A stretch of 64,000 nucleotides of DNA from Octopus sinensis (lineage: Eukaryota): the NCBI RefSeq assembly GCF_006345805.1, contig NW_021832428.1:1-64000 (forward strand). Reading direction: 5' to 3'. Shown here in pieces: positions 5,521 through 62,994 of this stretch. The translations under genes were made by a program, and so were the position numbers. Positions within the stretch are counted from its first letter, which is position 1; each line of letters starts with the position of its first letter. The notes beneath the pieces are model-generated. The model saw only the letters and a list, made by a program, of their open reading frames with translations. It was not told the DNA's origin and did not search any database.

Positions 5521-5563
5521 TAACCAATGAGTTATTCGCAATAAAATATTAGCTTTAATTAGA
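5521..5563 (+). promoter_or_regulatory. Conserved proximal upstream element of the LRR family (CCAAT-containing)
   Basis: TAACCAATGAGTTATTC(G/A)CAATAAAATATTAGC(T/C)TTAATTAGA-ATG precedes all four intact copies (5564, 7550, 45348, 62377). Confidence 0.45.
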
Positions 5564-8594: not shown

Positions 8595-9400
8595 TGTACG
8601 ACTGTGAGTTCAATGGAGAACATGCTGCGAGACATACAACAACAATTAAAATTACGAGAAACTTTACATTTTCATATGAAGAAATATTCTCGAATTTAAC
8701 AAACTTGGAGACATTGTGATCAACATTTTATTAACACTAGTCAATGTGATGGAGACTCGCCAAAGAGAATACTAAACAACTCATTTTATGGCTTGATTTA
8801 CCTACACTATATGTACATTCAAATATTTTGAATCATTTGATCACTTTAGTAAACTTCGTTACGTGAATGTAGATGCCTTTGAACGTTTAGTCGCATTATC
8901 ATCTCTGTACAAATCTTATTCTAACATTAAAGTTACATACCATCAAATTCCATTTTCCAGTCGCGTTTAATTTAAGAACAATCGTCCCCTCAACCTTCTG
9001 TATTTTAAATTACTGAGTGTATAGTATTATTGATGGCCAGAAAATGTGTATATTCACGAATGGGGCGCTACCCATAATGAATACTTGGATATTCACCTAT
9101 AAGGATTACGAGATTGCCGATCAGTACTTATTCGTTCGCCACCTTGTTATTAACTAACAAAAGTGTGAATATAAAACCAGATATATTTTTCCAAGCAATA
9201 CTAAAATTGGAGCGAGCAGATGATAGATTAGTTTACTCATAATAGATTGCAACCTCTGCTACCATCCCACCCCAATAAACATGATATGCAAAAAGGATCG
9301 TGATCAATCAAAAATTCGAATATCAGTTATTAACTAACCTAGTTATTTGTTCTAATATTTCCTTGTTCTACTTCTTATGTGTTGTTACATGGAGTAGTCA
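8595..9400 (+). pseudogene. Variable LRR family copy 3, 5'-truncated pseudogene
   Basis: It starts inside exon 2. The intron-3 acceptor is mutated, exon 4 has a deletion, exon 5 has a stop, and the intron-6 donor is GT->GA. Confidence 0.8.
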
Positions 9401-9434
9401 CAGTCAAAGATACATGATCTCTTACAAATATATG

Positions 9435-10811
9435 TCACAGGCGCTGTGAGCGACCGAGCGCAGCGAGCGACTTTGACTACAAATAAAAATATATGATGAT
9501 AAATAATATAGCCCAACCTGTACAGTAATCGTATATATCTTTTGGTGTGGATGCCACATTCGAGTACAATCAGTGTCCTCCACCACCACACAGCTTACGT
9601 TGACACTAATTGTGGGGAGGACACTCGAATAATTAAGGAGTATCAGATTGTACTCATTACTTGAAACCCTCGACAACACAATAGTCTCCGAATTAGTACT
9701 GCACTCCACATCTACTCCCCCACTCACACTCAATCGGTCTATTACAGTTGTCTCCTTTCTCACATCTAACACAGGAAAAATCACAGCATTCGCCCATTTC
9801 AATGTGACATTCTTCTCTTTAATCGTATCCACTTGGATTGTATACACTCCCACTCTGTTGTTGGTGTAGTTCACATCCACATCAAATACATCATTCAACA
9901 CTTTATATGTGCCGACCGGTGTAATCTCTCCACTATCCGTCAAAGAATATATTCCGTTGATGGTTGTATGTGAATACGTTGGCATTCCGTATTTTGCAAT
10001 CTCCTCGTCCGTGGGTTGGATTTTGATCAAATGTTTTCCGCTTATCGGGACTTTTTTGAGGATGACGTCGTAGAACTGAATGGGAGTGTTGCGGGAGGAG
10101 TTGAATGTGATGGCAATGTCCATGAATGACCAGTAGCGTATGTCGAGTTGGTCAAAGGCAATGACTCGCAGGTTAATGGGGAAGAGGGGAGTAAGGGAGG
10201 AGTGGCATACAAGAGTGGGGGATGATTTGTTATTTGTGAGGGAGAACTGACTATCCCCCACCACTTCATACCATGTCTGTCCATTCACCCCCGAGTCTTT
10301 ATCCACAGCTTTCGGGAAGTGGATAATTAACCCAGTTGATAATCCTCCCAGTGTTATGTTCCGTTTATTTCTTGGGAATATTGGGGGGTTGTCATTTATG
10401 TCCAGGACCTATCACTTTAGTTCACCAGTTCTTACTGTTATATATATTTCGACTGTGTATGATTTGTAATCTTTTAGAAGTGTGATTTCTAAGAATATAA
10501 CACCATATTTAAATCCAGAACGAGGTCCGTCGTAGTCTATTCGATCAAGCACCTAATTTAATTAAGTTATATTCATTTAACCATTATTTCTCCAAATATA
10601 TTAGCCGAGAAATACACATTTGAATACTTAATATCTGTGTAGTATCCACATTGCACACCAGTCCCTTGGCAGAAGTTGTATACGACAGTGCCAACAGGAA
10701 TCTCTTCTTTTATTGTCTTGTATAGTTTTATTCTCTCAGAGTGAATGAAAGTGGCGAGTAAAGTGAGTAGTAGAGTATTCTATATAAGTTAGTGTTTACA
10801 CTGCCAACCAT
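9435..10811 (-). CDS. Protocadherin-like gene copy B, 3'-truncated (about four EC repeats, no TM)
   Basis: It has an ATG-only first exon and 29/29/27-nt introns, signal peptide MNTLLLTLLATFIHS, and EEIPVGT, RIDYD, VLDINDNPPIF and AVDKDSG. Homology to copy A stops inside intron 4 at about 9478. Confidence 0.75.
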
Positions 10812-10893
10812 TAAGGAGGATTAGCATCGCCGGAATATTTGTTTATATACTGTTTAATAACCCGGGAATCGTAGTTTGAGATTTATTTTGACC

Positions 10894-11214
10894 AATCTGA
10901 TTCATTCCGGGTGGTGGAGTACTTATTGGAATTCCACTGTTATCACTTCGGCTAAAGGAAGGCTCCATGCATCTAATGTGGAACCTGAATTGACGCCCTC
11001 ATCAGTGATCTCACTGCGTAACCGGATGTCTTCATCGGCCACACTACAAAAAAAGGGGACAAGATGAAGCGGAGACACATTCATTTGAATTAGTTAGTTT
11101 CTTGATAACATGTTCTCTTTCTGTCTTGATCTTTATAAAAAAAGTGTGGCCGAATAGCGAGATGTCAACATGTTGTTTAAATCTTGCGGCATGGCTAATC
11201 ACGATTAAATCTGA
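10894..11214. mobile_element. About 307-bp insertion flanked by AATCTGA direct repeats in the cadherin B upstream region
   Basis: It is absent from the paralogous upstream regions at about 36180 and 40790. AATCTGA occurs at 10894-10900 and 11208-11214. No TIRs were seen. Confidence 0.45.
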
Positions 11215-11605
11215 CTAGGCGATAAACAAATCATGGATTGTTTTCCATAATACGTTTGATGGCCCAATGCACAAAAACACTCCAAAATCGTCAATAACAT
11301 ATGTTAAGCACTAAGTTCGACTTACTGAGAAATGACCTTTCGATCGTCAATCCCAAATTGTAATTAATTATCCTGATATGGACACCTTTTGTTTATAATA
11401 ATTGTCATCTCAGTCCACCTTAATGCGACAAAACATTAAATGAATGCATTTAGTAGAAAAACTAGCCTGCTAAAGTACAATTTGCCACCCACAGGGGGTG
11501 GTTGGTTGAAATCCTACCTCTGTAAGACAACTGGCTGTATCATTAAAACTCCTAACTTAGTCTGCAAATATAAAACAACGATGAAATAACCACACTTTAG
11601 TTAAG

Positions 11606-27759: not shown

Positions 27760-30700
27760 CCATAATTATTATTATTATTATTTAAGCCAAAAAACAGAAT
27801 CACCGTCTTAACCATTAACTAACGTGTTCAGGTGATTCCGACACTTCTCAACAGTCGAGCCATCTTTTCACGATGTTCAGACCGTGACCCCACACACTTT
27901 CTGTATGTACGGTGAAATGCTTGTGGTCCATCTCCACGATCCCTCCCACTTGCCTCTACAAGAGACTCCAGTGTTCGATGGACAATTTTCCTGTCGGTAT
28001 GGTCCTTCAGTAGGTTTATGGATTTTTCTTGGATTTTCTCGATTTTTACTTGGTTCGTTGCCGCCAGGTTACAGCCCCAAGCAGCACATGCATAGCCTAT
28101 TGTTGGCTCGATATACTGCTTGTAAAGGGTCTCTACCCCTGGCGGACAAGTTCTCCCACAGTTCCAAAGAAAGGCTTTCACAAAATTGATTTTCTTAATA
28201 CAAGTTGACACGATCGATTCAACATGAGGTGAAAAACAGAGGAAAGTATCAAACGTTACACCCAATATCTTCTGTGTTTTCTTTTGTGTTATTGGGACTC
28301 CATTCAGCGTGACTTCAATAGTTTTCGTCCCCATCTTCCTGTTTTTCGTGAATAGGGTGACTGCTGACTTTTCGGAACATGCATGTAGTCTGTTTTCATA
28401 TAGCCATCCATATAAGTCGTCCAGTATTCTTTGTAGTCTTTCCTTCGCGTATTCGACATTTACATCCCTAGATGCGACAACTATGTCATCGGCATAGGAG
28501 AGTAGTATGTCATTATTATCCATAGGAACCGGGAGATCATTCAGAAACAAGTTGAAGAGGGTCGGGGATAAAAGAGAACCCTGGGGTACACCATTGGGCA
28601 ATAAGCGTGATCTTGAACTCTCGTTCCCGACGCACACTTTCCCACGACGTCCGCTCAAAAAATTCGCTATCCATAGCTTCATAGGTGTAGAAATATTTGT
28701 ACCAAATATCTTTTGAATTAGGATCTTCCTTGGGACGGAGTCAAACGCTTTTTGAATGTCGATAGTGCATACAATTGATTTCTCCTGCAATTTCTTCTTT
28801 TTGTGTCCTTCATTTATAAAATCTGTTAGTGTGGTGAGGAAGGAGGTCGTTGACAATCCTTCCTTGAATCCATGTTGAAATGTGGATTGTGGGAGGAAAG
28901 GGCGAATATGTTTTAGGACCAGTTTTTCCAAGATTCTTGACAGCACACATATAAGGGATATTGGTCTATAGGAGCCGGGGTCGTTTTTCGGTCTTCCAGG
29001 TTTTAATATTGGCCGGATTTTTGATAGTTTCCATAAGTTCGGTATAGAGTTCGTGAATAATGATGTGTTATAGATCGTGGTTAAAGCATTTATTGAAACT
29101 GGGCCCAAGTGTTTTAGTAGAATAAGTGGAATTCCATCCGGTCCACATGAGTTTGTTTTCTTCTGATTCGAGATTGTTTCAGACACCTCTTCAGGAAGAA
29201 AATAAGTCGTCGGGGGCCTTTTGGATGGCTTTGATTTTAATCTTGGCTGTGAGTTCATTTTTTTATAAGGAATATGACTAATCTTGACACAGTGTTTCAT
29301 AAAATTGTTTAGATTGAGCTGATATGTTTCTGTTTTACGCTCGTCAGGATTCTTTAAGCGTCTCAACATCGTCCACATGGCCGAAATAGAGGCTTGTTTA
29401 TTCATGGCTCTAGAGATTCAGCTGAGCTTCTTCCTTTGGACTTGGTTGGTATTATTCGTAATAAGCATGTTTAGAGCCCTGATTCGATCGATGATTACTT
29501 TGGGTCGATACTTTCTTTTCTTGAGGCTGGTTCTTTCTCTGATTAGTTTTTTCGTTCTTGAGTCATATTTTGAGCTCCCACTTCTTATACATGCTCTTCT
29601 GATAATCAAATTTCTTGCATCTATGATAGTTTTGTTGAAGCTTTCCACTGCCCTGTCCAAGGAAGAAAAATTCTTAGGGTGAAAGTTCTGGAGTCTTGAA
29701 TCGACGTAATTTGCGAAAGCATTCCAATCTGCGTTTTCGTAATCATAGAAATAATTTGGTTTCAGTATGAGATGTGGAGAACAGTTCATTCTCATTATCA
29801 TTGAGTGGTGGTCACTTCGGAGATCATAGCGGACCGACCACTTGATGATAGGGGAAAGCCGAGGTGAGCAGATTGATAGATCTGGCGATGTCCTCGTGTC
29901 CTTAGAGTTGTAGGGTGTTCGAGTGTTCTTTTTCGGGTTGTTAAGGATTATTAACTTCTGCAATTGCGATATCAAAAGGTTTCCTCTGGCATCGGCAGTC
30001 TGATATCTGAACCAAGCGGGATGCTTCGCGTTCAGATCTCCGCATAAGAGTAAGTTATCCAATTTATCAAGGCTTGATAGGTCAAAACGATAGCCCTTCT
30101 TGCATGAACCTGGGGGAGGTACGTAGACATTGGCGATTTCAAGTCTTCCGTAGGAGGTCATAAGTGAGATTCCAATTATTTCGGTGTTGGAGTCCTTCTT
30201 TAGGCTTGTATACGGTAAGGGATTCTCGAAATATTTTATTCCTCTCCATGCTCCGACTCGCGGTCACATCGTAGTGCATCGTATCCAGCAAAAAGAGGAG
30301 TAGGGATCCGTTTCGAAAGTTTCGTCTCTTGGAGAAGACAGATATCTATTCGGTTCTCCTCCAAAAAACTGGCAAGTTCCGCCGTCTTTCCTCGAATCCC
30401 GTCAATATTCAGGCATTGTATTGTTAGCTTTGGACCGGGATTCTGTTCCACGTCACCTGAGGTCAACAGCAACAATCGATAGTAAGTGCCAACGTTGAGA
30501 AGATGCCGTCCAGGGGGAAGTCCTCTGGTTGGCGGGGAGCAAATGGTTCTTTTTAGATACCGTTTAGGACTGTATCCGGCGCCACCAGAAAAGGTGAACC
30601 ACATGACGCGCGCTAAAAACATAATTCAGTCAAAGATGATGTTTTTTCTATCGGATCTGTCAAAAAAATATGTTTACCAGTACGAATCATTGTATTTATT

Positions 30701-35479: not shown

Positions 35480-36610
35480 ATTCAAGTAAAAATTTATTCC
35501 CATCTATTCAAGCACGTAATCAAAATAATCCTATCTTTATCATTTAAATTAGTTTTACATTTCTGTTTTTAAGATCTGACAATTGAAATAAGGACTTGTC
35601 CAGACAATAATGACAGATACACTTAATGATTTAGCTCTGAAAAATATTAACAGTCATTTTTCCCAATCGTTTAATACAGCCTATTTAAAAAAATGAGTTT
35701 TTATTGTGGCTAAGCATAGAAGATTATTTTAAAAATCATTGGCTTTGTTTAGAAAAAGAAATCGCGCGAGTCCTTGATCTGGTCTTTAAAATTAATTTTT
35801 AACTAGGTCTAAAAATAGGGTGGTAAATATTATTTTAGGAGCTATATAATTTAAATATTGTATTACATGTTGGAGGATAAAATATGGATTGTTATATTCA
35901 AATATTAAAGAACCAGAGATCAAGTTTTACAAGTAAAAATTAATATAATTACTAAATTCTAAAATAAATTATTGAAATGAAAAGAATTTGTTGTGGTTTT
36001 GTAATTTTGGACGCATTTTATTATAGTAGAATAACAATAAAACAAGTTAAAAATGGTTGAAAATATTCCCTAATTTATTGGAGTGCCGTAATTTGAACAT
36101 TTGACTACTTTGGAGTGTTTTTGTGCATCTGGGCAATCAAAAATATTATGGAAAACAATCCATTTTTTGCTGAGACAGATTGACCACAAATAAACTTTTA
36201 ATCTCAAATATGATTACGACTTTATTAAACAGTATATAAACAAATATACATTATCTCAAATATGCTTTCATCGTCGATTTGGAATCTAATGATTCTTTGA
36301 GTATTCACAAATCAGTGGACGGGAAATATATTGCAATGATCGATCTACTTGTTATACTTTTTATTGCTTTGACCAGTTTTGTGTTTATCGTTATCAGAAG
36401 AATATTCTGGTGTCATTTGTAAAGAAAAATATAGAATATGCAACTAACAATGAAATTTACGAGAAGTACAATACTTACAATGAGGATACGTTTCTCGAAA
36501 ATATTCATTCAATTCTGAATTTTCTGAATGATTTTATTATCAAAACTTCTCACGATTTGTTAGAAAATTTGACAGTCAATTTATATTCCGGTGACCATTA
36601 TTGGTGAAAT
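35480..36610 (+). pseudogene. Internally deleted protocadherin-like copy (upstream region joined to TM/tail)
   Basis: 35480-36250 parallels 40200-40840. It then jumps to degenerate HKSVDGKYIA...KKNIEYATNNEIYE, followed by a piece homologous to 46440-46740. Confidence 0.7.
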
Positions 36611-36731: not shown

Positions 36732-37125
36732 TCATAATCGTCGTTTTTCATCTTTCCTTGGATTTTTCTTGATTTTCGTTTTCTCAAAATAAGACAAGTC
36801 CAGAATTAAAATAATATGATTAAAGGTTGCAAAAGTGTCGTACATCTCGTAAATTTCGTTATTTGTCGCATATTCCACATTTTTCTTTACGAATAATGCC
36901 ATAATATTCTTCCGATAACGAAAACCAACAAAACTGGCCAACCCAAAAGTATAACAAAGAGAACAATCATCGCAATATATATCCCGTCCACTGATTTGTG
37001 GACATTCAAGGAATCATTGGATAACAAATTTACGCTGAAAGTATATTTGAGGCAAGAATGCTTTCGTGAAATAGCAGTTATCGTCAATGTATAGTTCTCT
37101 CTCAAAGACGGTTGAATTTCCATAA
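36732..37125 (-). pseudogene. Protocadherin-like 3' fragment (membrane-proximal, TM, tail), frameshifted
   Basis: It reads EIQPSLRENYTLTITAISRKH...SVDGIYIAMIVL...FRYRKNIMALFVKKNVEYATNNEIYE. Confidence 0.8.
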
Positions 37126-37313
37126 CAAACTGTATCAGGACAATAACGAAATTTATGAATTGTGTGATATTTAATCATTTATCGAGATTATTATTGTTTG
37201 TAAGTTCTTTATTGTATTATATCTCACTATTTCAAGTCAATTTAAAAGTTATGATGCATTAGGTAAAACTAATTGTTTAGTCAAAACAAATAAGTAATCC
37301 CAGTTAGTAAATA

Positions 37314-40130: not shown

Positions 40131-40864
40131 AATAAATAAAAGAAATCTTAGTTCAAGGTTAATGTACAGGCTGCCAATAGATATCGCATGGCCCATGTGA
40201 ATTAGAATACTATTATTCAAGTAAAAATTAATTCCACCTATTAAAACACGTAATCAATGTAAGCCTATCTTATCATTTAAATAAAAAAGGTTATTATTTA
40301 TGGAAAAAATATGACAAATAATTAATGAATAGACTGAGGCAGTTTAGAAGATCTGACAGTTTAAATAACGATTTGTCCAGACAATAAAAACAGATACACT
40401 GAATGATTTAGGCCTGAAAAATATTAACAGTCAATATTCCCAATCGATTAATATTGTATGGTATCACTTTCCCATATCAAAAAATAAGGAATAAAAAATT
40501 GTTTTTAAAAATCATTGCCTTTGTTTAGAAAAAAGCATCTCGAGAGTGCTTAATCTAGTCTTTAGAATTAATTTGTAATGAATTATTGAAATGATAAGGA
40601 ATGGTGTGGTTTTGTAATTTTAGACGCATTATATTACAGTAAAATAACAATGCAGTGAGTGCAATTAAGACACATTCAAAATGGTTGAAAAATATTCCCT
40701 AATTTATTGGAGTGCCCTGATTTTAACATTTGGAGTGTTTTTGTGCATTTGGGCAATCGAAAATATTATGTAAAACAATCCATGATTTGTTTACTGCTCA
40801 AATATGATTACGGCGTTATTAAACAGTATATAAACAAATATTCCGGTGATGCTAATCCTTCTTA

Positions 40865-43342
40865 ATGGTTGGCAGTGTAAACACTAACTTGTATAGAATA
40901 TACTACTACTCACTTTACTCGCCACTTTCATTCACTCTGAAACCATACAACTATACAAGACAATAAAAGAAGAGATTCCTGTTGGCACTGTCATATACAA
41001 CTTCTGCCAAGGGACTGGTGTGCAGTGTGGAGACTACACAGATATTATGTATTTAAATATGTATTTCTCAGCTAATCTATCAGGAGAAATAATGGTTAAA
41101 TAAATATAACTTAATTAAATTAGGTGGTGTATCGAATAGATTACGAAAAAATTGTTTTGAGCAGTCAAGAGGGAATAATTAACTTGGAACTAATTCTTAC
41201 AAAAAATGATGAAATAGATATAGTAAAAATATATATAACAGTAAGAATTGGTGAACTAAAGTGACAGGTCTTGGACATAAATGACAACCCCCCAATATTC
41301 CCAAGTAATAAACGGAACATAACACTGGGAGGATTATCAACTGGGTTAATTATCCACTTCCCGAAAGCTGTGGATAAAGACTCGGGGGTGAATGCACAGA
41401 CATGGTATGAAGTGGTGGGGGATAGTCAGTTCTCCCTCACAAATAACAAATCATCCCCCACTCTTGTATGCCACTCCTCCCTCACTCCCCTCTCCCCCAT
41501 TAACCTGCGAGTCATTGCCTTTGACCAACTCGACATACACTACTGGTCATTCATGGACATTGCCATCACATTCAACTCCTCCCACAACACTCCCATTCAG
41601 TTCTACGACGTCATCCTCAAAAAAGTCCCGGGAAACAGAAATAAAGTGCTCACAATCCAACCCACGGACGGGGAGATCGCAGAATATGGAAGACCGACGT
41701 ACCCAACACGCGTCTATGGGAAATTTTCGGTGTCATATGACGGAGAGATTACACAGTTCGGCACATATACAGTGTTGAATGATGTATTTGATGTGGATGT
41801 GAAATACACCAACAGCAACAGAGTGGGAGTGTATACAATCCAAGTGGAGACGATTGAAGAGAAGAAGGTCACATTGAAATGGGCGAATGCTGGGAGTTCG
41901 TCTGTTTTAGATGTGACAAAGAAGACAACTTTAATAGACCGATTGAGTGTGAGTGGGGGAGTAGATGTGGAGTGCAGTACTAATTCGGAGACTGTTGTGT
42001 TGTCGAGGGTTTCAAGTAATGAGTACAATCTGATACTCCTTAATTATTCGAGTGTCCTCCCCACAATTAGTGTCAACGTAAGTTGTGTGGTGGTGGAGGA
42101 CACTGATTGTTCTCGAATGTTGCATCCACGTCAAAAGATATATACAATTACTGTACAGGTTGGGATATACTATTTATCATCATATATTTTTATTTGTATT
42201 CTTACTTAAATTTATAATAGATTATGCCTAAAGATTACAATCCCACACCACAATTATTGAAAATATATGAGAATATGCCCATTCATACCGATGTTTATAT
42301 TGGAATTACTGAAGATTGGAGAATAACAGACAATCCAAATTTTAGTGATCAATCATTTAATAAAAGTTTCATATCTTCAAAGAGGTTATTTGACCAAGAA
42401 ATCGAAAAGGTTGTTGATGCTGAGCTTCGCTTACCAAATAATACTTATATCAATAAAACGATTGAAATTATGGACGTGAATGACAATTCTCCAGTGTTTA
42501 CAAACAAGACATGTTCTGTCATTACATTGAGAAATACTTCTCCCGGACAATATTTAACAAATGTATTTGCTGAGGATGCTGATCTTGGAATGAACGGAAA
42601 AATCAATTATAAAGTCATTTCAGTAACGAATATGAATGAAGACATTGGAAGCTGTGATTCAAAAACAAACTTCGCGAATAAATTTAAAATTGATCCGAAT
42701 TCGGGACAGTTATACGTAAATCAGATCATTGAAAATGCGGGATATCTTCTTCTTAATATACAAGCTACTGACTCGGGGTCACAAAAATTATTTGCCAATA
42801 TTCGCTGTCTTGTTCACGCGGTCGATTTGACGTCTATTTTTGATTATTCATTCAACGGGGGTAGTGCAGTGCAGCATCAGAATATTAAGTTGTCACAAAT
42901 TCAACTTGGACAAACTTTTTTGAAGAATACAGCTACTTTGTGGAGTTATTTCTTCGACGATTTTATATTTACAATTCCCGATGATTCCTTGCGGTATTTC
43001 AACGTTGATCCTTATTCCGGAAATGTCAGTTACGTTGGAGAAATTCAACCGTCTTTGACAAACAACTATACTTTGACGATAACTGCTTTCTCACGAAAGC
43101 ATGTTTACCTGAAATATAATTTCAGTGTAAATTTGTTATCGCAAAGTTCTTCGACTGTTCATCAATCTGTGGACAAAAAATATATTGCTATCATCGTCCT
43201 GCTTGTTGTACTTCTTACTGGTTTGGGCATTTTTGTTGGTTTTCGTTACCGCAAAAATATTCTGTCATTTATGAAGAAAAATGAGGAATATGCAACAAAC
43301 AACGAAATCTACGAATGTCAAGATGTTTACAACAACCTTTAA
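40865..43342 (+). CDS. Protocadherin-like single-pass membrane protein, copy A (5 exons, 776 aa)
   Basis: Introns lie at 40868-96, 41095-123, 41241-67 and 42159-220. It has a signal peptide, cadherin motifs (VLDINDNPPIF, AVDKDSG, IMDVNDNSPVF, AEDADLGMNG, ATDSG), TM IAIIVLLVVLLTGLGIFVGF and a short tail ending VYNNL*. Confidence 0.9.
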
Positions 43343-44220: not shown

Positions 44221-44550
44221 AGTTTGTGACAATATCCCAAATCTTTTATGGTTCCTATTCTTTGAGATTTTCTAAATTCTCCTTCTGTCACGTCATTACC
44301 GACTAGTTTATTCATGAGGGATATGAACACTAAATTGTTTGCATGATTGTCGTTTAAATTACATTTTTACAGGAATGCCACACTTATTAAGCAGGGGAAG
44401 ATTGTGTTTTATTTCACATCCATCCAAGCTGTGCTAATCCATGAATAGCATCTAAAAAAGAATTTTTGGCAAGTGGTGTCGCAAAAGAGGAACAAGGAAA
44501 TATTAAAGCAAATAATTAGGTTAGTCAATTAGTAACATCCGAAATGTAGG

Positions 44551-45348
44551 TCAAAAGCAATCCTTCCAGCATAGAAGATTGCTTGATCCGGGATATCGGC
44601 AGAGGTTGCAATCTATTGTGAGTAAAATAACACACCATAGGCTTCCTCACTGATTAGTGTTGCGTCTCGAGCTCGATTTAGATATATTTCTCCACTTTTA
44701 TTAGTTAATTTGATATTTAGATCATCTGTCACTGGCGTAATCCTTATATTTTAATATCTAAGTATACATTATGGGTTGGGACCCATTTGTGAATATGCAC
44801 ATTTTCTGGCCGTCAATAATACTACAAAGTCAGTAAGTTAAAATACTTCATGTAGACGGGACGACTGATTTTTGGCCTCTGGAAAATGGTATCTAGTGGC
44901 ATGTAACTTTAATGTTAGAATAAGATTTGTACAGAGTTGACAATGCGACTAAACGTGCAAAGGCATCTACGTTCACGTAACGAAGGTCACTACAGTCATA
45001 CAGATCTCTAATGATTCAAAATATTTGAATGTACATTTGGTATAGGTGAATCAACCCGTCAAATGAGTTGTTTAGTATTCTCTTTAGCGAGTCTCCATTA
45101 CAGTAACTAGTGTTAATAAAATGTTGATTACAATGTCTTCAAGTTTGTTAAATTCGAGAATATTTCTCCATTTGGAAATTTAACGTTTTTATTAATTTCA
45201 ATTGTTGTTGTACGTCCCGCAGCATTTGCTCCATTAAATTCACAGTTTTGCAAAACTCTGATTCAAATAAGCAATTTTTCAAAAACTGTTGTAAGTCACA
45301 GTCACTTTGGACCACTAAGTCAACAAAAAGTAGGACAAGTGAAAGCAT
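44551..45348 (-). CDS. Secreted variable LRR protein, copy 4 (8 exons, intact)
   Basis: It has the same seven introns. The spliced frame is MLSLVLLFVDLVVQSDCDLQQVLQNC...LKTFYCNGD...LIHLYQIDLYDC...LSTLYMPLD...CWKDCF*. Confidence 0.85.
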
Positions 45349-46399
45349 TCTAATTAAAGCTAATATTTTATTGTGAATAACTCATTGGTTAGACATCAAA
45401 TAAATTAAAAACTTTATTAACTAAACCCAAAACCGAAAATGATAAGAAATTAACTAATTATTGATCCTACTTTTTAAAAATTTTTCTCCTCTTGAGGGAA
45501 CTCCATCTAGGAATTTGGATAAGTTACAAAAATTTTTTTGAGCCGGAATACACTTCAAATCCGAGAACTCCGTTACTCGTGATTATGAATAAAACACTGA
45601 TGTTCTGTTCACAATTACATCGAGTTAATCTGACATCATTGATTTCAATCGGAAAATTGCCACTAAACGTTGAGTGTGTCGAGTGAGCCATATTTATCGT
45701 TTGTGACTACATCACAAACTTTATAGCTTTAAATATTGTTGGTTGCGATACAAAGATATCTAGACGACAAAGCGTTGTCTCATTAGTAGTAATGAGTTAT
45801 TACTTACTAAGAAGATGGCTTGCACTGTATGGTCTTGGTTAATAATAATCAATTTATAGTTATTTAAAAGTTAATAGAGTCATTTATGTACGGAAATTCT
45901 CAGACTGTTCTCGAGAATGGCAATAGAAATTCTTTGCTAAAACGAAACGGAAAGGGCTTTGAATACGATTTGTGCAAAGGGTAGTCTGCGCGACACAAAG
46001 GAACTAAATTGATTTTGGTTTTTTATGTGTTCTCGGCAGTGCTGATAATAATATGTAACGTGGAATCGACCAAAAAGGCACGAGTTTCTCGCCGACAGTC
46101 GGGAGAGTTTCTACTAAATTTCAAAGTCAAAAAAGATGTAGAGAAACTTTCAAAATGAATTAAAAAAGAAAACCTTTTTCAGAAGAAGGCCATTCTTTCA
46201 AACATAAGAAATTCGGCCAGTGGCAATAATTTTAAAGAATGCTCCCACTTGATTTAAAATTGAGGAACTCGAGGACTTTTTGAAAAGCAATGTTAAATAA
46301 AAAATGACTTTCGAAAAAAGTTTGTTTCATAAGGAGCAGTGTCATTTTCAGGATTGTCGTCTATTTTCGCATATTCTAGACGGGAATAGAGTAAAATAA

Positions 46400-46869
46400 C
46401 CTTAGACGATTTTCTTGTCGAAAATAAGGTTGGGGATAAGTTTCTCGAAAATACTGCTTCAATCCCGAATTGTCTAAATTATTTTATTTCAAGACATTTC
46501 TTAGAATATCTAACAGACAATTCATATCCTAGAAATGTGACCATTATTGGTGAAATCCCGTTGACTGGCAAGACCTACCCATTCACATTTTTAAATTTAT
46601 CCAAAAAGTATTATTCCGTGCGATATTCGTTCATTGTTTATTTGGTGGCATCACATTTTTCGATTATTCACATATCACTCATAATTGTCGTGTGCTTACT
46701 ATATTTCCTTGGATTTGTCTTGATTTTCGTTTTCAGTTATCAAAAGTGTATTATCAAGATTTTTAAAAAAAACGCCGACCTGTATTGTGGCAATAACAGA
46801 AATTATGGACTGTGCGCATTTAATCATTTATTCGAATTTTTATTATTTTGTGTAAATTGTTTAATGTAA
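46400..46869 (+). pseudogene. Divergent protocadherin-family fragment (membrane-proximal domain, TM, tail)
   Basis: IFLSKIRLGDKFLENTAS and NVTIIGEIP...YSFIVYL, plus a hydrophobic TM and KKNADLYCGNNRNY, align with the copy A C-terminal region. There are stops upstream. Confidence 0.6.
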
Positions 46870-48819: not shown

Positions 48820-49999
48820 ATGACATATTTTATTGGTTTATTACGATTTATTCAATGTATATTATTTTCATCTCTAAATGTAATGAAAATAACTCAATAA
48901 GGCTATGATTGCATATCCCATTCGCAATAAAGCATACGTTAAATGACGTAGAATTACTGGAACAATTCCTGGACCCTGACTCTGTCAATATGATAAGAGT
49001 ACTACTATCGAACACAAAGCTCAAGGTGCGGGTCGGCACGGCGTTTTCCGTGAATTCACGTGCAACGTCGGTACCCCTCAGGGAGACGCCCTCTCGCCGT
49101 TGCTATTCGTGATCTATCTGGAGACGGCACTACGAGACCTTCGAAAATTCTATGCTGGCAATATCGTTGAAATTGTATATGCAGATGACGTCGACTTCGT
49201 GTCAGACGACAAATCGGCCTTACTTCGACTCCTTGAAGTGGCACCTGCTGAGCTGAACAGATGGTTCCTTAAAATGAACGTTGGAAAAACCGACATCGTT
49301 GAAATCATGAGGATGGAGAGCAGCTCAAGTGAAGCCTGGCGCAAAACGAACAAACTCGGTTCTCTACTTGGGGACGGCCATGATATTGTCAGAAGAAAGG
49401 CTCTCGCTTGGGCCACGATGAACAAGATAAAGAAAGAGTGGATCGGCAAACGACGACTCTGTACGTCACTTCGTCTGAGGATGTATGAAGCCTTTGTCAA
49501 ACCAATCCTGACATATAATTCGGCGACCTGGGGAATGTCTAGTACTGAACAACGTGGACTTGATTCTTTTCACCGCAGGCAACTTAGATCCCTACTGGGA
49601 TTGAACTGGCCTATAAGAATCAACCAGGAATCGCTATACAATAGATGCAGAACTGGCCCTCTGAGTGTGGAAATCGTCAATATGCGGTGGAGGTTATTTG
49701 GCCATATTCTACGAATGGACATGCTTGCCCCAGCTAACATAGCAATGGAGGGCTACTTCCTGAAAGAGGGATCGAGCTTCCGTGGACGTCCACGTGTTAC
49801 GCTGCCGGAAACACTTGACGGAGACCTGAAATGTGTGAAGAAAAGGCTAAGGAGTGGTGAGGATCTGGACGAGCTGAGGAAACTCGCTCACGACAGAGGA
49901 GGTTGGAGGAGGCTGGTTCAAAGGATTGTTTTTAATGCTGCACGAGTAAAATTATAACTAATATGATTCTACGTATGTTGCAAATAATAATAATAATAA
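48820..49999 (+). mobile_element. 5'-truncated RTE-clade non-LTR retrotransposon
   Basis: It reads VP(QG)DALSPLLF (frameshift), YADDVDF, KPILTYNSATW and RPRVTL, with a (TAA)n tail at 49984-99. Confidence 0.85.
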
Positions 50000-50102: not shown

Positions 50103-50747
50103 TTAATTGTCGGGCTTAATTTTGAACATTTTCTTGAACAAATGGAGGACGTTGTGTGACTTGGCACGACAAAACAAATGTCTGGCAAGGGTGTGTGAGG
50201 GTTGTGAGGCCTTGCGGACATCATAGAGGGTAGGACTGCCGGTCTTAACTTGGAAGTATTGCATAAGGAGTGCCTGAAAAAAGTGTTTGACAGAGCAGTC
50301 ATTAATGACGGACAGGTGGTAGACATGGGAAAAGAATTGTGAGTGAGTGGTGACCTCGTAGACTGTACTGTCGGAGTGATTGTCGACGAAGGCAGTCAGG
50401 GGCATGGACTTGTTCCTCAAAAAGAGGATTTGGTTGAAAATGTCCTTCACTTTTTGGAAGGAGTACTTGTCCTTGTATTTATAGACGAGGATGATTATGT
50501 CCGCCTCGATTATGGCGATTTTGAGCATAGCGGGACTGCAGAAGGTGCCACACGTGTCGACGATTTGGAAGGTGGCCGTGTGATTGAGTTGAGCTTCGTA
50601 GACGTCGCCGATGGTGGGTTCGTAGGTGATGAGTTTCTTTCCCCACAAATAATTGGAGATGAGTGTAGTCTTGCCTGTGTTCTTGTACCCCATTACATAT
50701 ATTTTGAACTTGATTATGCCATTCAGAGAAATGCTCATGTCGTCCAC
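50103..50747 (-). CDS. Ras-family small GTPase (DIRAS/RASD-like)
   Basis: It has P-loop GYKNTGKT, YEPTIGDVY and IVDTCG.F..PAML, in a 214-aa single exon. Confidence 0.8.
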   Translation of the reverse strand: MDDMSISLNGIIKFKIYVMGYKNTGKTTLISNYLWGKKLITYEPTIGDVYEAQLNHTATFQIVDTCGTFCSPAMLKIAIIEADIIILVYKYKDKYSFQKVKDIFNQILFLRNKSMPLTAFVDNHSDSTVYEVTTHSQFFSHVYHLSVINDCSVKHFFQALLMQYFQVKTGSPTLYDVRKASQPSHTLARHLFCRAKSHNVLHLFKKMFKIKPDN

Positions 50748-50817
50748 TGCCTCGGCATTGGCTTATAATCAATCGCCCTCGTCAATGTCCTTATTTTAGT
50801 AATAATATTAATTGAAC

Positions 50818-52617: not shown

Positions 52618-55600
52618 TTATAAGTTGTATCTGCGGGAGAATGGACTGAGGTCGGTCGTCGTGTCCTGAAAGTCCAGCTGATTGAGCGACCTTCCAATAA
52701 AGTGGGAAGAGTACTGAGGAAAGGAATGTCCATCACTGGTCGTGTCCTTATAGCGGAGTAGTGTGGGTAGGCCATTTGGAGAACTGGAGTGAGGACTACT
52801 CGTAGGCCGTGTGGAGTGAGTGGCACGACAGGGGTCGACCGCCCGGATGAATTGAGAGAGGGATTGCCACCCCCCGCCTACTCGGACAAAGACTCCAGTG
52901 TGTGTGATGTGGACATACCTGATGGACGACCCAATCTACAGGTCGTGGGCAAGAATACTTGATATCGTCCATCGGAAATATAATTAACTCTGAGTGGTCT
53001 GTGACACGTGCAGTTGGTCAACTCGTGTTGGATAGCCCGTTCTAGGGAGGGAGGGGTGTTTGTCTGAGTGGGGACCTTCTGAGTGAGTGCGTCGATTAGG
53101 AGAGTGTAGTCCATGTCGTCCGAGTGTGGCCCAGCGAAGAGGGAGAAGACGGCATTGAGTTGAGGACGTGGACTGTCGAGGCCTGGTGAGTGATGGAGTG
53201 GTGTGACCTGCCTTGACGAGTCCGGTGACAAAACGTTCCCTGGTGATGCGGCCTTCCTGTTGGTTTTTGCGGAAAAAGTCGGTTATTCTGAGTTTGTTGG
53301 CCTTAATCCAGGACAAGTAGTTGGTTCGCCAGCGGGCAAAGTCGACATGTTCGAACTGGTGTGAGGGAATAGAATACTCTGCCGTACTGGTCGATGGAGT
53401 GTTGGAGAGTTTGTGAGTATTGGGCGGAGGTGGTGTTGAGGGCCTTCCACAGGTGGGATAATTGTGGAGTGGATAGTTGGTCGTATTTGTCCCTCAGACT
53501 GTGCTCGAATTCCTGAAATAGAGAATGACTGGACTTGGTGGTCTTGCATGAGTTGAGTGAGCATGGTAATGTCCTCGGGCAACGGATATCTCATCTTGTC
53601 AGCCAGGAAATGTCTGGCGTCGGTCAACCACTGCAATGTTTGGTCAGCGTGGAGGGCGTCCTGTTTGGCCCGGAGAAAGAGACCATTCAAGTGCTCAGTT
53701 CTCAGTTGTGCCTTCTTGACAATCTGGGAATGTGGTGGTTGGACGACCTGTTCCCAACTGGCACAACTGATGGTGTAGTCGTAGCGGACGAAGCGGACTG
53801 CGTTTGGGTGGACTCGACTCATTATTGTGTCGATGGTCTCCTTCAGTCGGTCTATTCTCTTCTCATCTTCCGCCAAACACTCCAGGAAAGTCTGCAATGA
53901 ACTGTCCCCTCTTACTTCGTGCTTGTCAATGGCCGACAGCAGTTGGTTCTTGTCCTCGCAGGACGGACGCACTCTCAGCACTTGTTCTGCCACTTTGATC
54001 ACCTTTCGGGCGTATTCCACTCCCTTCTCCATGTCCTCTGCCTCCACATTACACACCACTCACACCAATTCCACTGCTCGCCCAAGGTTCCTCCCCCTCT
54101 CGGCCATCAGTTCACCCACTCGCCCCCACTCACTCCCCACTCTACTTGCCAACTCCCGTCCCATCTCCTCCCTTTTACTCACACACCCATACTTTGTGCT
54201 GTTCTAACAACATTCCCACTGTCTTCATGTCCCCAAACACATTCCCGTTCGACAACAGATACTCCTCCACTTCACACAACCACGTCTCCTCCAAACACTC
54301 TCCTCGGAATATCTCTCCTCCATCCTCCATCACTCCACTCTTGTGCCACTCCACTCGATTCTATCCTTCACCCACACTCACTACTCGAATGTATTCACAA
54401 TATTCCATCGCCCTCCCCCATCCCCTCTCTATTTCATCCACCAAACCACCATCCCCTCCATCCTTTACCACCTCTTTTGCTACCGCCACACATCTCCGGT
54501 AATCGTCCTCGTTCAATTTCTCACATTCCCTCTACCATTAGGCCTGCTCATACCTCGAATCCTTCAATCTGAGTCCTCAGTGTGTCCTCATCCGTCGAAA
54601 GTGGTTGAATGTGTATGCACGCACAAAGACTGTTCTCCACCCATTCCAAGTGTCTCCTATAGGACAACACGTGGTTGATCTGAGGACATTGATGGGAGAA
54701 TATACTCTCATAATATTGGACTCCACCCTGTTGGAGTACACTGAGAGCTGAGAGGACCGTGCATCAATCTCCCTTACTGTGCTTTGCAATGCTCTGTGTT
54801 GGGCCAGTTCTTCCAACTCGGCCTACTGGTCAGAATAATATTCAACTTGGAGAGAGTAATACACATTGTACAGACGTTCCAAATCAGTGTCAGACTGCCA
54901 CACACATTCCCGACTGAGGAGTACTCGAGTGTATTCCACATTGCTCTACACAATCGGGAATACTCATCACTCTCAGTTTGCTCAATTCTTGACAAATGTC
55001 CGCCCACGAAAAGACCATTTCTTCAAACCGCGAGTCGCATTGGAAAGAACTCACCGAGTCCAGTAGTCGTTCATAGTTTAGTAACATGGCTGATATGGCG
55101 ATCGAGTCATCAAGCAAGTCCTGGTAGTCCACTTTGGACTGCTCATTTGCCAAGGCACACTTCAATTCTCTCATTTTCCTTTCCAAAGTCTGCAGAAATG
55201 AGGGGAATGATGAAAACTGATTCCATTTCCCTCATTGCCTCAGTCCTCGACTCAATCACTTGACAGTGTCGAGACAAAGTCGCGTGACTCCGTTCGAATT
55301 CCTGGAGGGCTACTTGATACCTCATTTCCACTCTCCGAACAATCCTCAATGCCGACTCTCCCAAATACTCCTCCACCGAGTTGAGAACTCTCATCACTTG
55401 CTCCATCCCCCTTCTTTGGGACTCGAATTGGGAAAATATAATCTGTGCATATGTTAGAGGGGACTGCCTGTTGGGGGACACTCTCCACGGATTGTGTCAT
55501 GTGCTCATTGAAGGTGCAAATACTGGACTTGACAAATTCAAAAAATGCGGAAATAATGTCCCACACGTGGGCGGTCTCTTTATACACGTGGGCGAGTATT

Positions 55601-60760: not shown

Positions 60761-61573
60761 CCTACTAAACAGAGATCACTTATTGGGCATACCACACAAC
60801 CAAACAACAATTCCTTTATTTTTATGTCATTTCATTATTACTTAATTATTATTCCTTCAAAATAAATATACGACAAAGGGGACGAAGGGTGACAAATAAT
60901 TTTATTATATACAATCAAATCACTCTAAACCGATTCCTATAGAGAGGAGACCGGTATATTGCACATCAAATTTACTTATAACGACAAAGTGATATTAATA
61001 AAAATTTGTCAATAAGGATTGGCTCGTTTTTAGCCTCGATTTAGCAATCGTTTTATTTTTTGGATAGATCAGTCTGTCGACGGGATCGAGTAATGCAGGG
61101 TCTTGAATGCAAACAAAGTGGTAGATTTAGCATTTTTTGAACATTTGTGCGTAGTAATTTCTCTATATTTTCTGGCCTGTTTGCTTATCTGAGTCATCGT
61201 CATTATCTTCAGAAGCTGAGACTGTTTGTATTGGCCAACGGGGAATGATTCCTATTCATTGAGATTTTCAGTGGGTAGTTAAAAGTCCAAGTTGACAAAT
61301 TCTTCTTCTGTCACGTCATTATCGACTAGTTTATTCATGAGGGATATGAACACTAAATTGTTTGCATGATTGTTGTGTAAATTACATTTTTACAGGAATG
61401 CCAGACTTATTAAGCAGGGGAAGATTGTGTTTTATTTCACATCTATCTAAGCTGTGCTAATCCATTAATAGCATCTAAAAAAGAATTTTTGGCAAGTGGT
61501 GTCGCAAAAGAGGAACAAGGAAATATTAAAGCAAATAATTAGGTTAGTCAATTAGTAACATCCGAAATGTAGG

Positions 61574-62377
61574 TCAAAAGCAATCCTTCCAGCATAGAAG
61601 ATTGCTTGATGCGGGATATCGGCAGAGGTTGCAATCTATTGTGAGTAAACTAACACACCATAGGCTTCCTCAGTGATTATTAGTGTTGCGTCTGTTGTTG
61701 CAAATGGATCCATTTCTACACTTTTATCAGTTAATTTGATATCTAGCTGATTTGTCACTGTTGTAATCCTTATATTTGAATATATAAGTATACATTATGG
61801 GTTGGGACCCATTTGTGAATATGCACATTTTCTGGCCGTCAATAATACTACAAAGTCAGTAAGTTAAAATACCTCATGTAGAGGGGAAGACTGATTTTTG
61901 GCCTCAGGAAAATGGTATTTAATGGCATGTCACTTTAATGTTAGAATAAGATTTGTACAGGCTTAATGATCCGACTAGACTTGCAAAGGCATCTACGTTC
62001 ACGTAACGAAGGTCACTACAGGATTGCAGTTCTCTAATGATTCAAAATATTTGAATGTACATATGGCGTAGGTGAATCAACCCGTCAAATGAGTTGTTTA
62101 GTATTCTCTTTAGCGAGTCTCCACGACAGTGACTAGTGTTAATAAAATGTTGATTACAATTGCTCCAAGTACGTTAAATTCGAGAATATTTCTCCATTTG
62201 GAAATAGAACGTTGCTAGAAATTGCAATTATTGTGTTATGTTCTGCAGCATTTGCTCCATTGAATTCACAGTTTTGCAAAACTCTGATTCAAATAAGAAA
62301 TTTTTCAAAAACTGTTGTGTTAAATCACAGTCTCTTTGGACCACTAAGTCAACCAAAAGTAGGACAAGTGAAAGCAT
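61574..62377 (-). CDS. Secreted variable LRR protein, copy 5 (8 exons, intact)
   Basis: It has the same seven introns. The frame reads MLSLVLLLVDLVVQRDC...LEQFHCRGD...LIHLRHIELQSC...SLSLDMPLN...CWKDCF*. Confidence 0.85.
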
Positions 62378-62994
62378 TCTAATTAAGGCTAATATTTTAT
62401 TGCGAATAACTCATTGGTTAGACAACAAATAAATTAAAAACTTTATTAACTAAATCCAAAACCGAAAATAATAAGAAATTAAGTAATTATTGATCCTAGT
62501 TTTTGGAAATTTTTCTCATCTTGAGGGGACTCCATAACTCATTATTTCCACATTTACTTTCATGCTCAGAGTCATTTATAACTTGTCAATTTGTTTCATC
62601 TGGGGTTTTCGCATTATTAGTTTGTCATTGCAAACAACTGCCGTAATGACTTCTTTATTAGGCATATTAATTCCCATTCCTATGCTCCAGAACGATGCTT
62701 TCTAGTGTCTTTTTCATTACAAATGCCAGAATGTATGTTCTTGTCGGGCCTTGAATAAATAATCTTTCGATATAGGAGATTGAACACTTTGTAATACTTT
62801 TAAACCTACTCCGTCCCTATTCACAAAAAGATAGAACACTATTTTTTTCATTACTGTCGTTTAAATCATATATTTTTACTGGAATGCCACATTTATTAAA
62901 GCAGAGAGAGATTGTGTATTATTTACGTCCATCCATGCAGTGCTAATCCACGGATAGCATATAAGAAAAAATTTTAGGCAAGCGGTGTCGCAGT

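What the first reader, a model, noticed from the sequence alone, without database searches (positions are those of the whole stretch)
40865..42158. Protocadherin-like paralogs show the same signature: near-identical introns but hypervariable EC1 and EC3
Seen: copies A (40865+) and B (10811-) differ at only 1, 1 and 2 sites in introns 1-3. The 39-aa exon 3 between those introns differs at 23 positions (VVYRIDYEKIVLSSQEGIINLELILTKNDEIDIVKIYIT vs VLDRIDYDGPRSGFKYGVIFLEITLLKDYKSYTVEIYIT). EC2 differs at about 5 residues, the next repeat is again divergent, and the following one is almost identical. Established: clustered protocadherins achieve strict homophilic specificity through EC1-EC4 antiparallel interfaces. 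Inference: an independent expansion of variable cadherins for self/non-self, cell-identity or host-attachment specificity.
Basis: partly seen in the sequence, partly recalled or inferred. Interest (0 to 1): 0.8.

Follow-up and report, generated by a model that had tools for sequence, protein, structure and literature searches.

The report
Recombination mosaic in parasite cadherin copies
Two inverted copies of a protocadherin-like gene do have near-identical introns around very different coding patches, but the patches are old sequence blocks swapped between mostly broken gene copies, not fast-evolving recognition sites, and the contig probably comes from a dicyemid kidney parasite sequenced together with its octopus host.

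Summary
Copy A (40865-42158, +) and copy B (10811-9518, -) differ at 1, 1 and 2 sites in introns 1-3. They differ at 23 of 39 residues in exon 3 and at 5 residues in EC2, then comes another divergent block.

Synonymous sites in the divergent blocks are about as diverged as replacement sites: exon-3 core pS 0.57 against 0.024 in EC2. dN/dS is about 0.65-0.84 inside the blocks and 0.72 outside, so there is no sign of diversifying selection.

With more paralogs the blocks turn out to be discrete types shared in different combinations. Exon 3 splits {A}|{B,C,F}; the EC3 block splits {A,C}|{B,F}. Copy C is a clear recombinant (27 runs of site patterns; the minimum in 100,000 permutations was 46).

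Only A is intact (779 aa, signal peptide and transmembrane segment). B lacks exon 5 and ends at a dispersed repeat. C is interrupted, F is frameshifted, and the rest are fragments.

The best explanation is gene conversion or recombination among members of a lineage-specific cadherin family.

The assembly is Octopus sinensis. Introns of 20-29 nt, unplaced small contigs and no orthologues in other octopuses point to a dicyemid parasite mislabelled as octopus.

The parts
40865..43342 (+). Copy A, the only intact family member in this subgroup. It has five exons (40865-40876, 40897-41094, 41124-41240, 41268-42158, 42221-43342) and introns of 20, 29, 27 and 62 nt. The product is 779 aa with a hydrophobic N-terminus, about 7 EC-like repeats, a transmembrane segment and a 37-aa tail.
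   Evidence: AF2 predicts a helix over the transmembrane segment
41145..41225 (+). Exon-3 core, the C-terminal half of EC1. The A type is found only in A and its allele. B, C and F share the other type. In-register nucleotide identity is 52%.
41268..41627 (+). EC2, the homogenised block. A vs B gives dS 0.025. GC3 is 0.58-0.59.
41628..41762 (+). Divergent block in the EC3-like repeat (aa 230-274). A and C share one type, B and F another, and G is mixed.
41892..41936 (+). Small divergent block (aa 318-332). A and G share one type; B and C share the other.
9518..10811 (-). Copy B, exons 1-4 only (10811-10800, 10779-10582, 10552-10436, 10408-9518). The reading frame is open for 406 codons, but there is no exon 5 and so no transmembrane segment.
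9180..9477 (-). Sequence replacing the rest of intron 4 and exon 5 in B. From about 9436 downward it is a dispersed repeat with at least 40 copies, almost all on small contigs.
10881..11225 (-). Insertion of about 340 nt just upstream of B's start codon. It is shared with copy F and absent from A and C. NCBI model P0002 uses part of it as coding sequence.
36252..36481 (+). Relic of a cadherin C-terminal/transmembrane exon (52-69% identity to A aa 702-777).
36831..37135 (-). Second relic of the C-terminal exon, inverted (66-71% identity to A aa 675-776).
46342..46806 (+). Diverged C-terminal relic with a transmembrane-like stretch (33% identity to A aa 609-770).

Best explanation
A and B belong to a lineage-specific cadherin-like (protocadherin-like) gene family. 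The organism is most likely a dicyemid mesozoan whose DNA was co-assembled with its host, Octopus sinensis.

The 'identical introns, divergent patches' pattern is a recombination mosaic. The subgroup holds at least two old sequence lineages, A/C-like and B/F-like. Their copies have exchanged segments by non-allelic gene conversion or unequal recombination. Recently exchanged or duplicated tracts (5' flank, introns, EC2, most of EC4) are 95-99% identical. Tracts that escaped exchange, or came from a diverged donor, keep an old divergence that is as large at silent sites as at replacement sites. These tracts are the exon-3 core, the EC3 block and aa 318-332.

Only A is a complete gene and probably makes a type I membrane adhesion protein. 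B is a 1.47-kb 5' fragment cut off by a transposon-like repeat. C, F, G, H and I are interrupted or decayed.

Shown here: the mosaic, the silent-site divergence and the state of each copy. Inferred: gene conversion as the process, its direction, the adhesion function and the dicyemid origin.
For: 1. Block types are shared in conflicting partitions. The exon-3 core splits {A, allele}|{B, allele, C, F}. The EC3 block splits {A,C}|{B,F}. Block aa 318-332 splits {A,G}|{B,C}.
2. Among A, B and C, 72 sites group B with C and 69 sites group A with C. They fall in 27 runs, against a minimum of 46 in 100,000 permutations. C matches B over 40993-41226 and matches A over 41248-41741.
3. For A vs B, the exon-3 core has pS 0.57 (dS about 1.08) and pN 0.46. 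The EC3 block has dS 0.39 and dN 0.33. EC2 has dS 0.025. Omega is 0.65 and 0.84 in the blocks against 0.72 outside, with no heterogeneity (p = 0.82).
4. The exon-3 differences look like old, saturated divergence. All codon positions are hit (19/10/15) and transitions to transversions are 17:27. In-register identity is 52% against about 30% off register, so this is not a frameshift artefact.
5. The A-type core keeps residues seen in the next subfamily (IINLELILTK against IININLTLKK). A recent burst starting from a B-type sequence would not be expected to restore them.
6. GC3 is highest in the homogenised EC2 (0.58) and lowest in the exon-3 core (0.19-0.22), as in converted against unconverted regions of fish protocadherins (PMC1852091).
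7. Allelic differences in the 41-kb overlap cluster inside B: 15 in 580 nt, against 1 difference in positions 1-9000 and none in 20-37 kb. At 10 of them one haplotype equals A, C and F, which suggests ongoing ectopic exchange.
9. A second paralog pair (C8318 against C8694) also shows block-wise divergence with raised pS, but in EC5.
10. Origin: the assembly is O. sinensis. Introns are 20-29 nt, and an unrelated gene in the window has a 22-nt intron. Among animals such introns are reported only in Dicyema and myxozoans (PMC13644364). D. japonicum was collected from O. sinensis and has 36.7% GC, 49% repeats and 1.24% heterozygosity (PMC6736024). No orthologue was found in any other octopus.
Against: No donor for the A-type exon-3 core exists in the assembly; it occurs only in A and its allele. 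Import cannot therefore be shown directly, and the direction of exchange is unresolved: flanks homogenised, or patch imported.

The divergent EC3 block has a GC3 as high as EC2, so the GC3 signal is not clean.

dN/dS at saturation is imprecise. The small block aa 318-332 (omega about 1.8 from 9 changes) and one window of the other pair (pN 0.37 > pS 0.23) leave room for some selection.

B's frame is open for 406 codons despite about 10% divergence. That could mean it is still used as a truncated protein.

The clustered allelic differences could in part be polishing errors in repeated sequence.

The dicyemid assignment is indirect; no dicyemid reference sequence could be compared.
Confidence: 0.7

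Rival explanations
1. One reading: working paralogous surface cadherins are under diversifying selection at their recognition interfaces (EC1, EC3), while the rest stays conserved. This would give a code for homophilic, self/non-self or host-attachment specificity.
For: The variable patches lie in N-terminal repeats, which carry specificity in clustered protocadherins (established knowledge; PMC1852091). All indels are in frame and the patches contain no stop codons. Omega is about 1.8 in aa 318-332, and pN exceeds pS in one EC5 window of another pair. Selection could also be what protects the patches from homogenisation.
Against: Silent sites in the patches are 10-40 times more diverged than in the flanks, and omega is below 1 and uniform. 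The patches are shared types, not one per copy. B lacks the membrane anchor, and C and F are broken. In another pair the variable domain is EC5, so there is no consistent EC1/EC3 rule.
Confidence: 0.12
2. Local in-place acceleration: a burst of mutation or relaxed constraint confined to about 100-nt patches in single lineages after a recent duplication, without any exchange between copies.
For: The A-type exon-3 core has no other copy in the assembly. Omega near 0.7 everywhere fits weak constraint.
Against: It cannot explain why C is identical to B in one patch and to A in the next. There is no base-specific mutation signature. The A-type core keeps the EC strand pattern and outgroup-like residues. 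The patches have sharp edges inside otherwise 95-99% identical sequence.
Confidence: 0.06
3. Assembly or polishing artefact: chimeric consensus among near-identical repeats creates an apparent mosaic.
For: Differences between the two overlapping contig ends are confined to repeated regions, including B. The contigs are unplaced parasite-derived sequences in a host assembly.
Against: A's exon-3 type and the whole B structure are reproduced on the second contig. Patches 30-48% diverged cannot arise from mis-mapped reads. The frames stay open across the junctions.
Confidence: 0.05

Closest known systems
Regional gene conversion among clustered protocadherin paralogs of vertebrates (fugu, zebrafish, human; PMC1852091)
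   Same: Cadherin-repeat paralogs have stretches homogenised at silent sites next to divergent ectodomain stretches. GC3 is higher in the most homogenised part.
   Different: Here the homogenised tracts include introns and N-terminal EC2, whereas in fish they are EC4-EC6. The copies are dispersed or inverted among transposons and are mostly pseudogenes. No tandem variable-exon array or constant exons are present.
Clustered and delta protocadherins (nearest solved relatives: PDB 6vg1, 6vg4 Pcdh10, 5dzv Pcdh-alpha7)
   Same: Type I membrane protein with N-terminal EC1-EC2 alignable from residue 2-5 of the mature chain. DxNDNxPxF linkers are present and the cytoplasmic tail is short.
   Different: Identity is only 21-34% over parts of the protein. 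Pfam recognises one repeat only. The EC1 Cys-X5-Cys loop is absent, and several linkers lack calcium-binding motifs. The ectodomain is split by ultra-short introns, and the EC2-EC4 region has no homologue outside this assembly.
Octopus protocadherin expansion (array of about 800-aa single-exon ORFs on C14 at 59.2-59.9 Mb of the same assembly)
   Same: Both are large lineage-specific cadherin expansions found in the same assembly, and NCBI names both as octopus protocadherins.
   Different: The window's family shares only 26-33% identity with the C14 array over EC1-EC2. It has a different gene structure and lies on small unplaced contigs. It probably belongs to the parasite, not the host.
Dicyemid cadherin repertoire ('Cadherin in 18 copies' in Dicyema sp., PMC6543705)
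   Same: A moderately sized cadherin-domain family in a roughly 30-cell parasite. This is consistent with the 10 or more loci seen here.
   Different: That paper gives only a domain count. No paralog structure, mosaicism or pseudogene content has been described.
Pseudogene-templated gene conversion systems (chicken immunoglobulin pseudo-V genes, trypanosome VSG; own knowledge)
   Same: One intact gene is surrounded by truncated copies that carry alternative sequence blocks and show evidence of exchange.
   Different: There is no evidence here of programmed or somatic conversion, of directionality into A, or of any benefit. The resemblance is only formal.

Membership tests
Cadherin superfamily | At least one extracellular cadherin repeat above the Pfam PF00028 gathering score | tested here: met
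   aa 507-604, 53.3 bits against a cut-off of 28.8, E 3.7e-14
Cadherin superfamily | Calcium-binding linker motif DxNDNxPxF between successive repeats | tested here: inconclusive
   Present at EC1/EC2 (DINDNPPIF, aa 112-120) and EC5/EC6 (DVNDNSPVF, aa 491-499). Degenerate or absent at the other junctions (NSSHNTPIQF and others), read from the sequence.
   Pfam finds nothing in aa 1-406 of A or in four other family members. A family profile of aa 212-406 hits CDH23 repeats over the first half of 'EC3' (E 1.3e-4). 'EC4' gets no hit. The AF2 model has pLDDT below 50 over aa 205-453.
Protocadherins (as proteins) | Protocadherin-type EC1 (Pfam PF08266, conserved Cys-X5-Cys loop) | tested here: not met
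   No PF08266 hit and no cysteines in the RIDYE... loop. Even so, phmmer aligns aa 22-167 to EC1-EC2 of Pcdh10 (i-E 4.3e-10), and the best PDB hits are all protocadherins.
Protocadherins (as proteins) | Six or seven EC repeats, a single transmembrane segment and a tail without a catenin-binding domain | tested here: inconclusive
   About 7 repeats by periodicity, of which 4 are supported. The transmembrane helix is predicted. The tail is 37 aa with no recognised domain.
Clustered protocadherin locus | The whole ectodomain and transmembrane segment are encoded by one large variable exon | tested here: not met
   Five coding exons with 20-62 nt introns
Clustered protocadherin locus | A tandem same-strand array spliced to shared constant exons | tested here: not met
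   A ends with its own tail and stop codon in exon 5. A and B are inverted and 30 kb apart, with LINE and repeat DNA between them.
Clustered protocadherin locus | Strict homophilic trans binding through antiparallel EC1-EC4 | not testable with these tools
   Needs binding or aggregation assays or a confident dimer model. The monomer model is already of low confidence.
Paralogs shaped by non-allelic gene conversion | Runs of sites supporting conflicting relationships along the alignment | tested here: met
   27 runs against at least 46 in 100,000 permutations
Paralogs shaped by non-allelic gene conversion | Silent-site divergence low in exchanged tracts and high in the others | tested here: met
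   dS 0.025 (EC2) against 0.39 and about 1.08 in the blocks; p = 1e-5 to 1e-7
Paralogs shaped by non-allelic gene conversion | Raised GC3 in converted tracts | tested here: inconclusive
   EC2 0.58 against exon-3 core 0.19-0.22, but the divergent EC3 block is 0.48-0.53
Dicyemid (Dicyema) genome | Spliceosomal introns mostly shorter than 30 nt, about 37% GC, LINE-rich, host Octopus sinensis | tested here: met
   Introns of 20, 29, 27 and 22 nt in two unrelated genes. GC is 0.28-0.49 in 2-kb bins, mostly 0.31-0.44, close to 37%. Reverse-transcriptase ORFs are present. The assembly is O. sinensis. Reference values come from PMC6736024 and PMC13644364.
Dicyemid (Dicyema) genome | Sequence identity to an authenticated dicyemid genome or transcriptome | not testable with these tools
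   No dicyemid sequences are reachable. The exact-match look-up found nothing.

The most novel reading that the evidence does not exclude
The truncated and interrupted copies (B, C, G and others) are not just debris. They would serve as a store of alternative EC1/EC3 cassettes that are copied by segmental gene conversion into the single intact gene A. A roughly 30-cell parasite would thereby gain heritable, or even clonal, variation in a surface adhesion molecule used for attachment to the host's renal epithelium or for cell sorting. This would be an animal-parasite analogue of pseudogene-templated diversification.
Probability: 0.05. Interest if true: 0.8.

Novelty: new member of a known kind. 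Interest (0 to 1): 0.3.

Why it matters
For the finding itself, this is a worked example of why block-wise paralog divergence should not be read as diversifying selection until silent sites and further paralogs have been checked.

Two side results matter more.
- A RefSeq octopus assembly appears to carry dicyemid parasite contigs whose genes are named as Octopus sinensis protocadherins (P0001, P0002, P0121). This can distort counts of the much-discussed cephalopod protocadherin expansion and comparative analyses built on it.
- The contigs give a first look at a dicyemid-specific cadherin-like family: conserved 5-exon structure, ultra-short introns, many decayed copies and active exchange between copies. 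Adhesion in this animal, both cell to cell and to the host kidney, is central to its biology and essentially unstudied at the molecular level.

Tried and rejected
1. Donor search for the A-type exon 3. A whole-assembly DNA search found only A and its allele. More distant family members are about 40% identical at the protein level and cannot be donors.
2. Frameshift explanation for the exon-3 patch. Rejected: identity is 52% in register, about 30% at every other offset, and the other frames are closed.
3. Base-specific hypermutation (DGR- or deaminase-like). Rejected: mixed spectrum, transitions to transversions 17:27.
4. The first dN/dS run was wrong because gap columns shifted the codons (coding rows). 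It was redone on a protein-guided codon alignment. The intron counts are still valid.
The run on NCBI model P0001 gave pLDDT below 50 over EC3-EC5, so no fold search was made.
6. Pfam scans of EC1-EC4 of A and four relatives found no cadherin hit.
7. The exact-match look-up of the exon-5 ORF in public assemblies found nothing. A search with the exon-4 ORF found only the two sister models from the same assembly.
8. Literature searches for a report of dicyemid contamination in the O. sinensis assembly found none.
Full report
**Observation**

The window holds two inverted copies of the 5' 1.4 kb of a gene. Copy A runs from 40797 to 42198 on the + strand. Copy B runs from 10880 to 9478 on the - strand. 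They are 90.1% identical over 1,412 aligned bases.

The reading frames define a gene model for A:
- exon 1, 40865-40876
- a 20-nt intron
- exon 2, 40897-41094
- a 29-nt intron
- exon 3, 41124-41240 (39 codons)
- a 27-nt intron
- exon 4, 41268-42158 (297 codons)
- a 62-nt intron
- exon 5, 42221-43342

The product is 779 aa, with a hydrophobic N-terminus, a transmembrane stretch and a 37-aa tail. NCBI's own model for this contig (P0001) uses the same exon 4/exon 5 junction.

- Introns 1-3 differ at 1, 1 and 2 sites.
- Exon 3 differs at 23 of 39 residues and 44 of 117 bases.
- EC2 differs at 5 residues.
- Residues 230-274 are again divergent, and the next repeat is nearly identical apart from residues 318-332.

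**What the protein is**

Pfam recognises a single cadherin repeat, aa 507-604. A direct comparison with solved structures aligns aa 22-167 with EC1-EC2 of delta and clustered protocadherins from the second residue of the mature chain. It also aligns aa 477-604 with later repeats. Every one of the 60 hits listed is a cadherin or protocadherin.

'Protocadherin-like' is therefore fair for the protein. Exon 3 encodes the C-terminal half of EC1, ending in the DINDNPPIF linker.

- Pfam finds nothing there in A or in four relatives.
- A profile of the family hits cadherin-23 repeats only over the first half of 'EC3' (E 1.3e-4).
- The AlphaFold model is unreliable across aa 205-453.

The locus is not organised like a clustered protocadherin locus. 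The ectodomain is split into five exons, each copy carries its own tail and stop codon, and A and B are inverted and separated by 30 kb of repeats and retroelement ORFs.

**Paralog census**

A search of the whole assembly found further close copies:
- C at C9004:137185-140161
- F on C6098
- partial copies on C9073 (G), C10538 (H) and C8294 (I)

It also found three more distant subfamilies (26-40% identity) that share the same exon 4/exon 5 layout.

The end of C9004 (250400-291662) matches window 1-41225 at 99.49% in one alignment. The copies there are therefore alleles, or an unmerged overlap, of A and B. They provide an independent assembly of both.

State of each copy:
- Only A is complete.
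- B has an open frame through exons 1-4, but homology stops in mid-intron 4 and exon 5 is absent. About 40 nt beyond the break a dispersed repeat begins, with at least 40 copies.
- In C, exon 5 is interrupted after ...FDYSFNG. An 843-nt replacement brings in a stop codon.
- F has many frameshifts and stop codons.
- G, H and I are fragments.

**The key test**

In the multi-copy alignment the divergent patches are not different in every copy. They are discrete types shared in conflicting combinations:
- Exon-3 core: A and its allele against B, its allele, C and F.
- EC3 block: A and C against B and F, with G mixed.
- Block aa 318-332: A and G against B and C.

Among A, B and C, 72 variable sites group B with C and 69 group A with C. 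They fall in 27 runs, and none of 100,000 permutations gave fewer than 46. C follows B from 40993 to 41226 and then follows A from 41248 to 41741. No single tree explains this, so the copies have exchanged segments.

Silent sites tell the same story (A vs B):

| Region | pS | dS | pN | dN | omega |
|---|---|---|---|---|---|
| Exon-3 core | 0.57 | about 1.08 | 0.46 | – | 0.65 |
| EC3 block | – | 0.39 | – | 0.33 | 0.84 |
| EC2 | – | 0.025 | – | – | – |
| Outside the blocks | – | – | – | – | 0.72 |

- The introns differ at 6 of 116 positions.
- Omega shows no heterogeneity between blocks and the rest (p = 0.82).

The exon-3 differences affect all codon positions and have more transversions than transitions. 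The two versions are homologous in register, 52% against about 30% at other offsets. This argues against a frameshift or a base-specific hypermutation process.

The A-type core retains residues seen in the next subfamily. It therefore looks like an old functional EC1 version, not a recent burst.

GC3 is 0.58 in the homogenised EC2 and 0.2 in the exon-3 core. Biased gene conversion would predict this, and fish protocadherins show it (PMC1852091). The EC3 block does not follow the rule.

The two haplotype copies of B differ at 15 sites within 580 nt. The 9 kb beside them has only one difference, and positions 20-37 kb have none. At 10 of the 15 sites one haplotype matches A, C and F. This suggests exchange is still going on, although polishing error in repeated DNA cannot be excluded.

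A second paralog pair from another subfamily also shows block-wise divergence with raised pS, but in EC5 and not in EC1 or EC3.

**Limits**

- No donor for the A-type exon-3 core exists in the assembly. I cannot say whether the patch was imported into A or the flanks were homogenised around an old difference.
- dN/dS at saturation is imprecise. Two very small windows have omega above 1. Selection may help the patches resist homogenisation.
- B's 406-codon open frame could mean it is still used as a truncated, secreted product.

**Origin of the contig**

The assembly is Octopus sinensis. The proteins of A, B's allele and C are in NCBI as 'protocadherin Fat 3-like', 'protocadherin gamma-A4-like' and 'fat-like cadherin-related tumor suppressor homolog' of that species.

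Several things argue that the contig is not octopus DNA:
- The genuine octopus protocadherin array is a run of single-exon ORFs of about 800 aa on the large contig C14. It shares only 26-33% identity with A.
- The window's family lies on small unplaced contigs.
- It has no orthologue in any other octopus, or anywhere else among 5.8 billion proteins.
- It has introns of 20-29 nt. An unrelated spectraplakin-like gene at about 53.5 kb has a 22-nt intron.

Among animals such introns are reported only in Dicyema and myxozoans (PMC13644364). Dicyema japonicum lives in the renal sacs of O. sinensis. Its genome has 36.7% GC, 49% repeats rich in LINEs, and 1.24% heterozygosity (PMC6736024). All of this matches the window. 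A Dicyema genome survey counted 18 cadherin-domain genes (PMC6543705).

I therefore infer, without a direct sequence comparison, that this is a dicyemid contig mis-filed as octopus.

**Verdict**

The pattern is best explained by duplication plus non-allelic gene conversion or recombination in a lineage-specific cadherin family, most of whose recent copies are decayed. This is a known kind of process in a new family and organism, and of modest interest. The probable parasite origin of 'octopus' protocadherin annotations is the more useful by-product.

Noticed in passing
whole window (C8899) and contigs C9004, C6098, C9073, C8198, C12470, C11469, C8851, C8594, C8318, C8694: These small unplaced contigs of the Octopus sinensis assembly look like dicyemid parasite DNA. 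They have 20-29 nt introns and about 37% GC, they are LINE-rich, and they have no orthologues in other octopuses. NCBI names their genes as octopus protocadherins (P0001, P0002, P0121).
   Followed up: partly
window 1-41225 = C9004:250400-291662: A 41-kb overlap at 99.49% identity between two contig ends was not merged. The 210 differences are clustered at 10-11, 13-16, 18-20 and 37-40 kb, with no differences elsewhere.
   Followed up: partly
window 52900-54100 (-): A spectraplakin-like gene (spectrin-repeat and EF-hand-like stretch ...HVDFARWRTNYLSWIKANKLRITDFFRK...) is split by a 22-nt intron, GTCCAGTCATTCTCTATTTCAG, and by a second short intron.
   Followed up: partly
window 27828-30263 (-); also 255-2119 (-) and 48980-49957 (+): LINE-type retroelement ORFs. 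The copy at 27.8-30.3 kb carries an endonuclease-like part and a reverse-transcriptase part (YADD motif) in one frame with a single internal stop codon.
   Followed up: no
window 5260-9120, 44270-45510 and 60830-63250: A repeat unit of about 2 kb is present in tandem downstream of B. Inverted copies lie downstream of A and near 61-63 kb (83-100% identity). The same unit also follows copy C on C9004.
   Followed up: partly
window 12939-13214 and 19227-19609: Short tandem arrays: three units of 92 nt and three units of 119 nt (67-82% identity between units).
   Followed up: no
window 36252-36481 (+), 36831-37135 (-), 46342-46806 (+): Relics of the cadherin C-terminal/transmembrane exon. Two of them form an inverted pair 350 nt apart.
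   Followed up: partly
window 10409-10435 (-) and C9004 allele: In the allelic copy of B, intron 3 has lost its in-frame stop codon (TGA to TGG). NCBI model P0002 reads straight through it (…YITVRTGELKWQVLDIND…). P0002 also joins upstream and far-downstream pieces that look unrelated.
   Followed up: partly
L016 (C8694:268571-272452): A distant family member carries a long serine/threonine-rich tandem repeat (…SSKIRFTTSTIGANNSNIDAD… about 12 times) in place of the membrane-proximal repeat. This looks like a mucin-like stalk.
   Followed up: no
window 50103-50762 (-): A 219-aa open frame with small-GTPase (Ras-like) motifs (GYKNTGKTTL…DTCG…).
   Followed up: no
L013/L014 (C8318 against C8694): Another paralog pair has a conserved EC2-EC4 region (pS about 0.15, pN about 0.03) but a strongly divergent EC5. 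One 30-codon window there has pN 0.37 > pS 0.23.
   Followed up: partly
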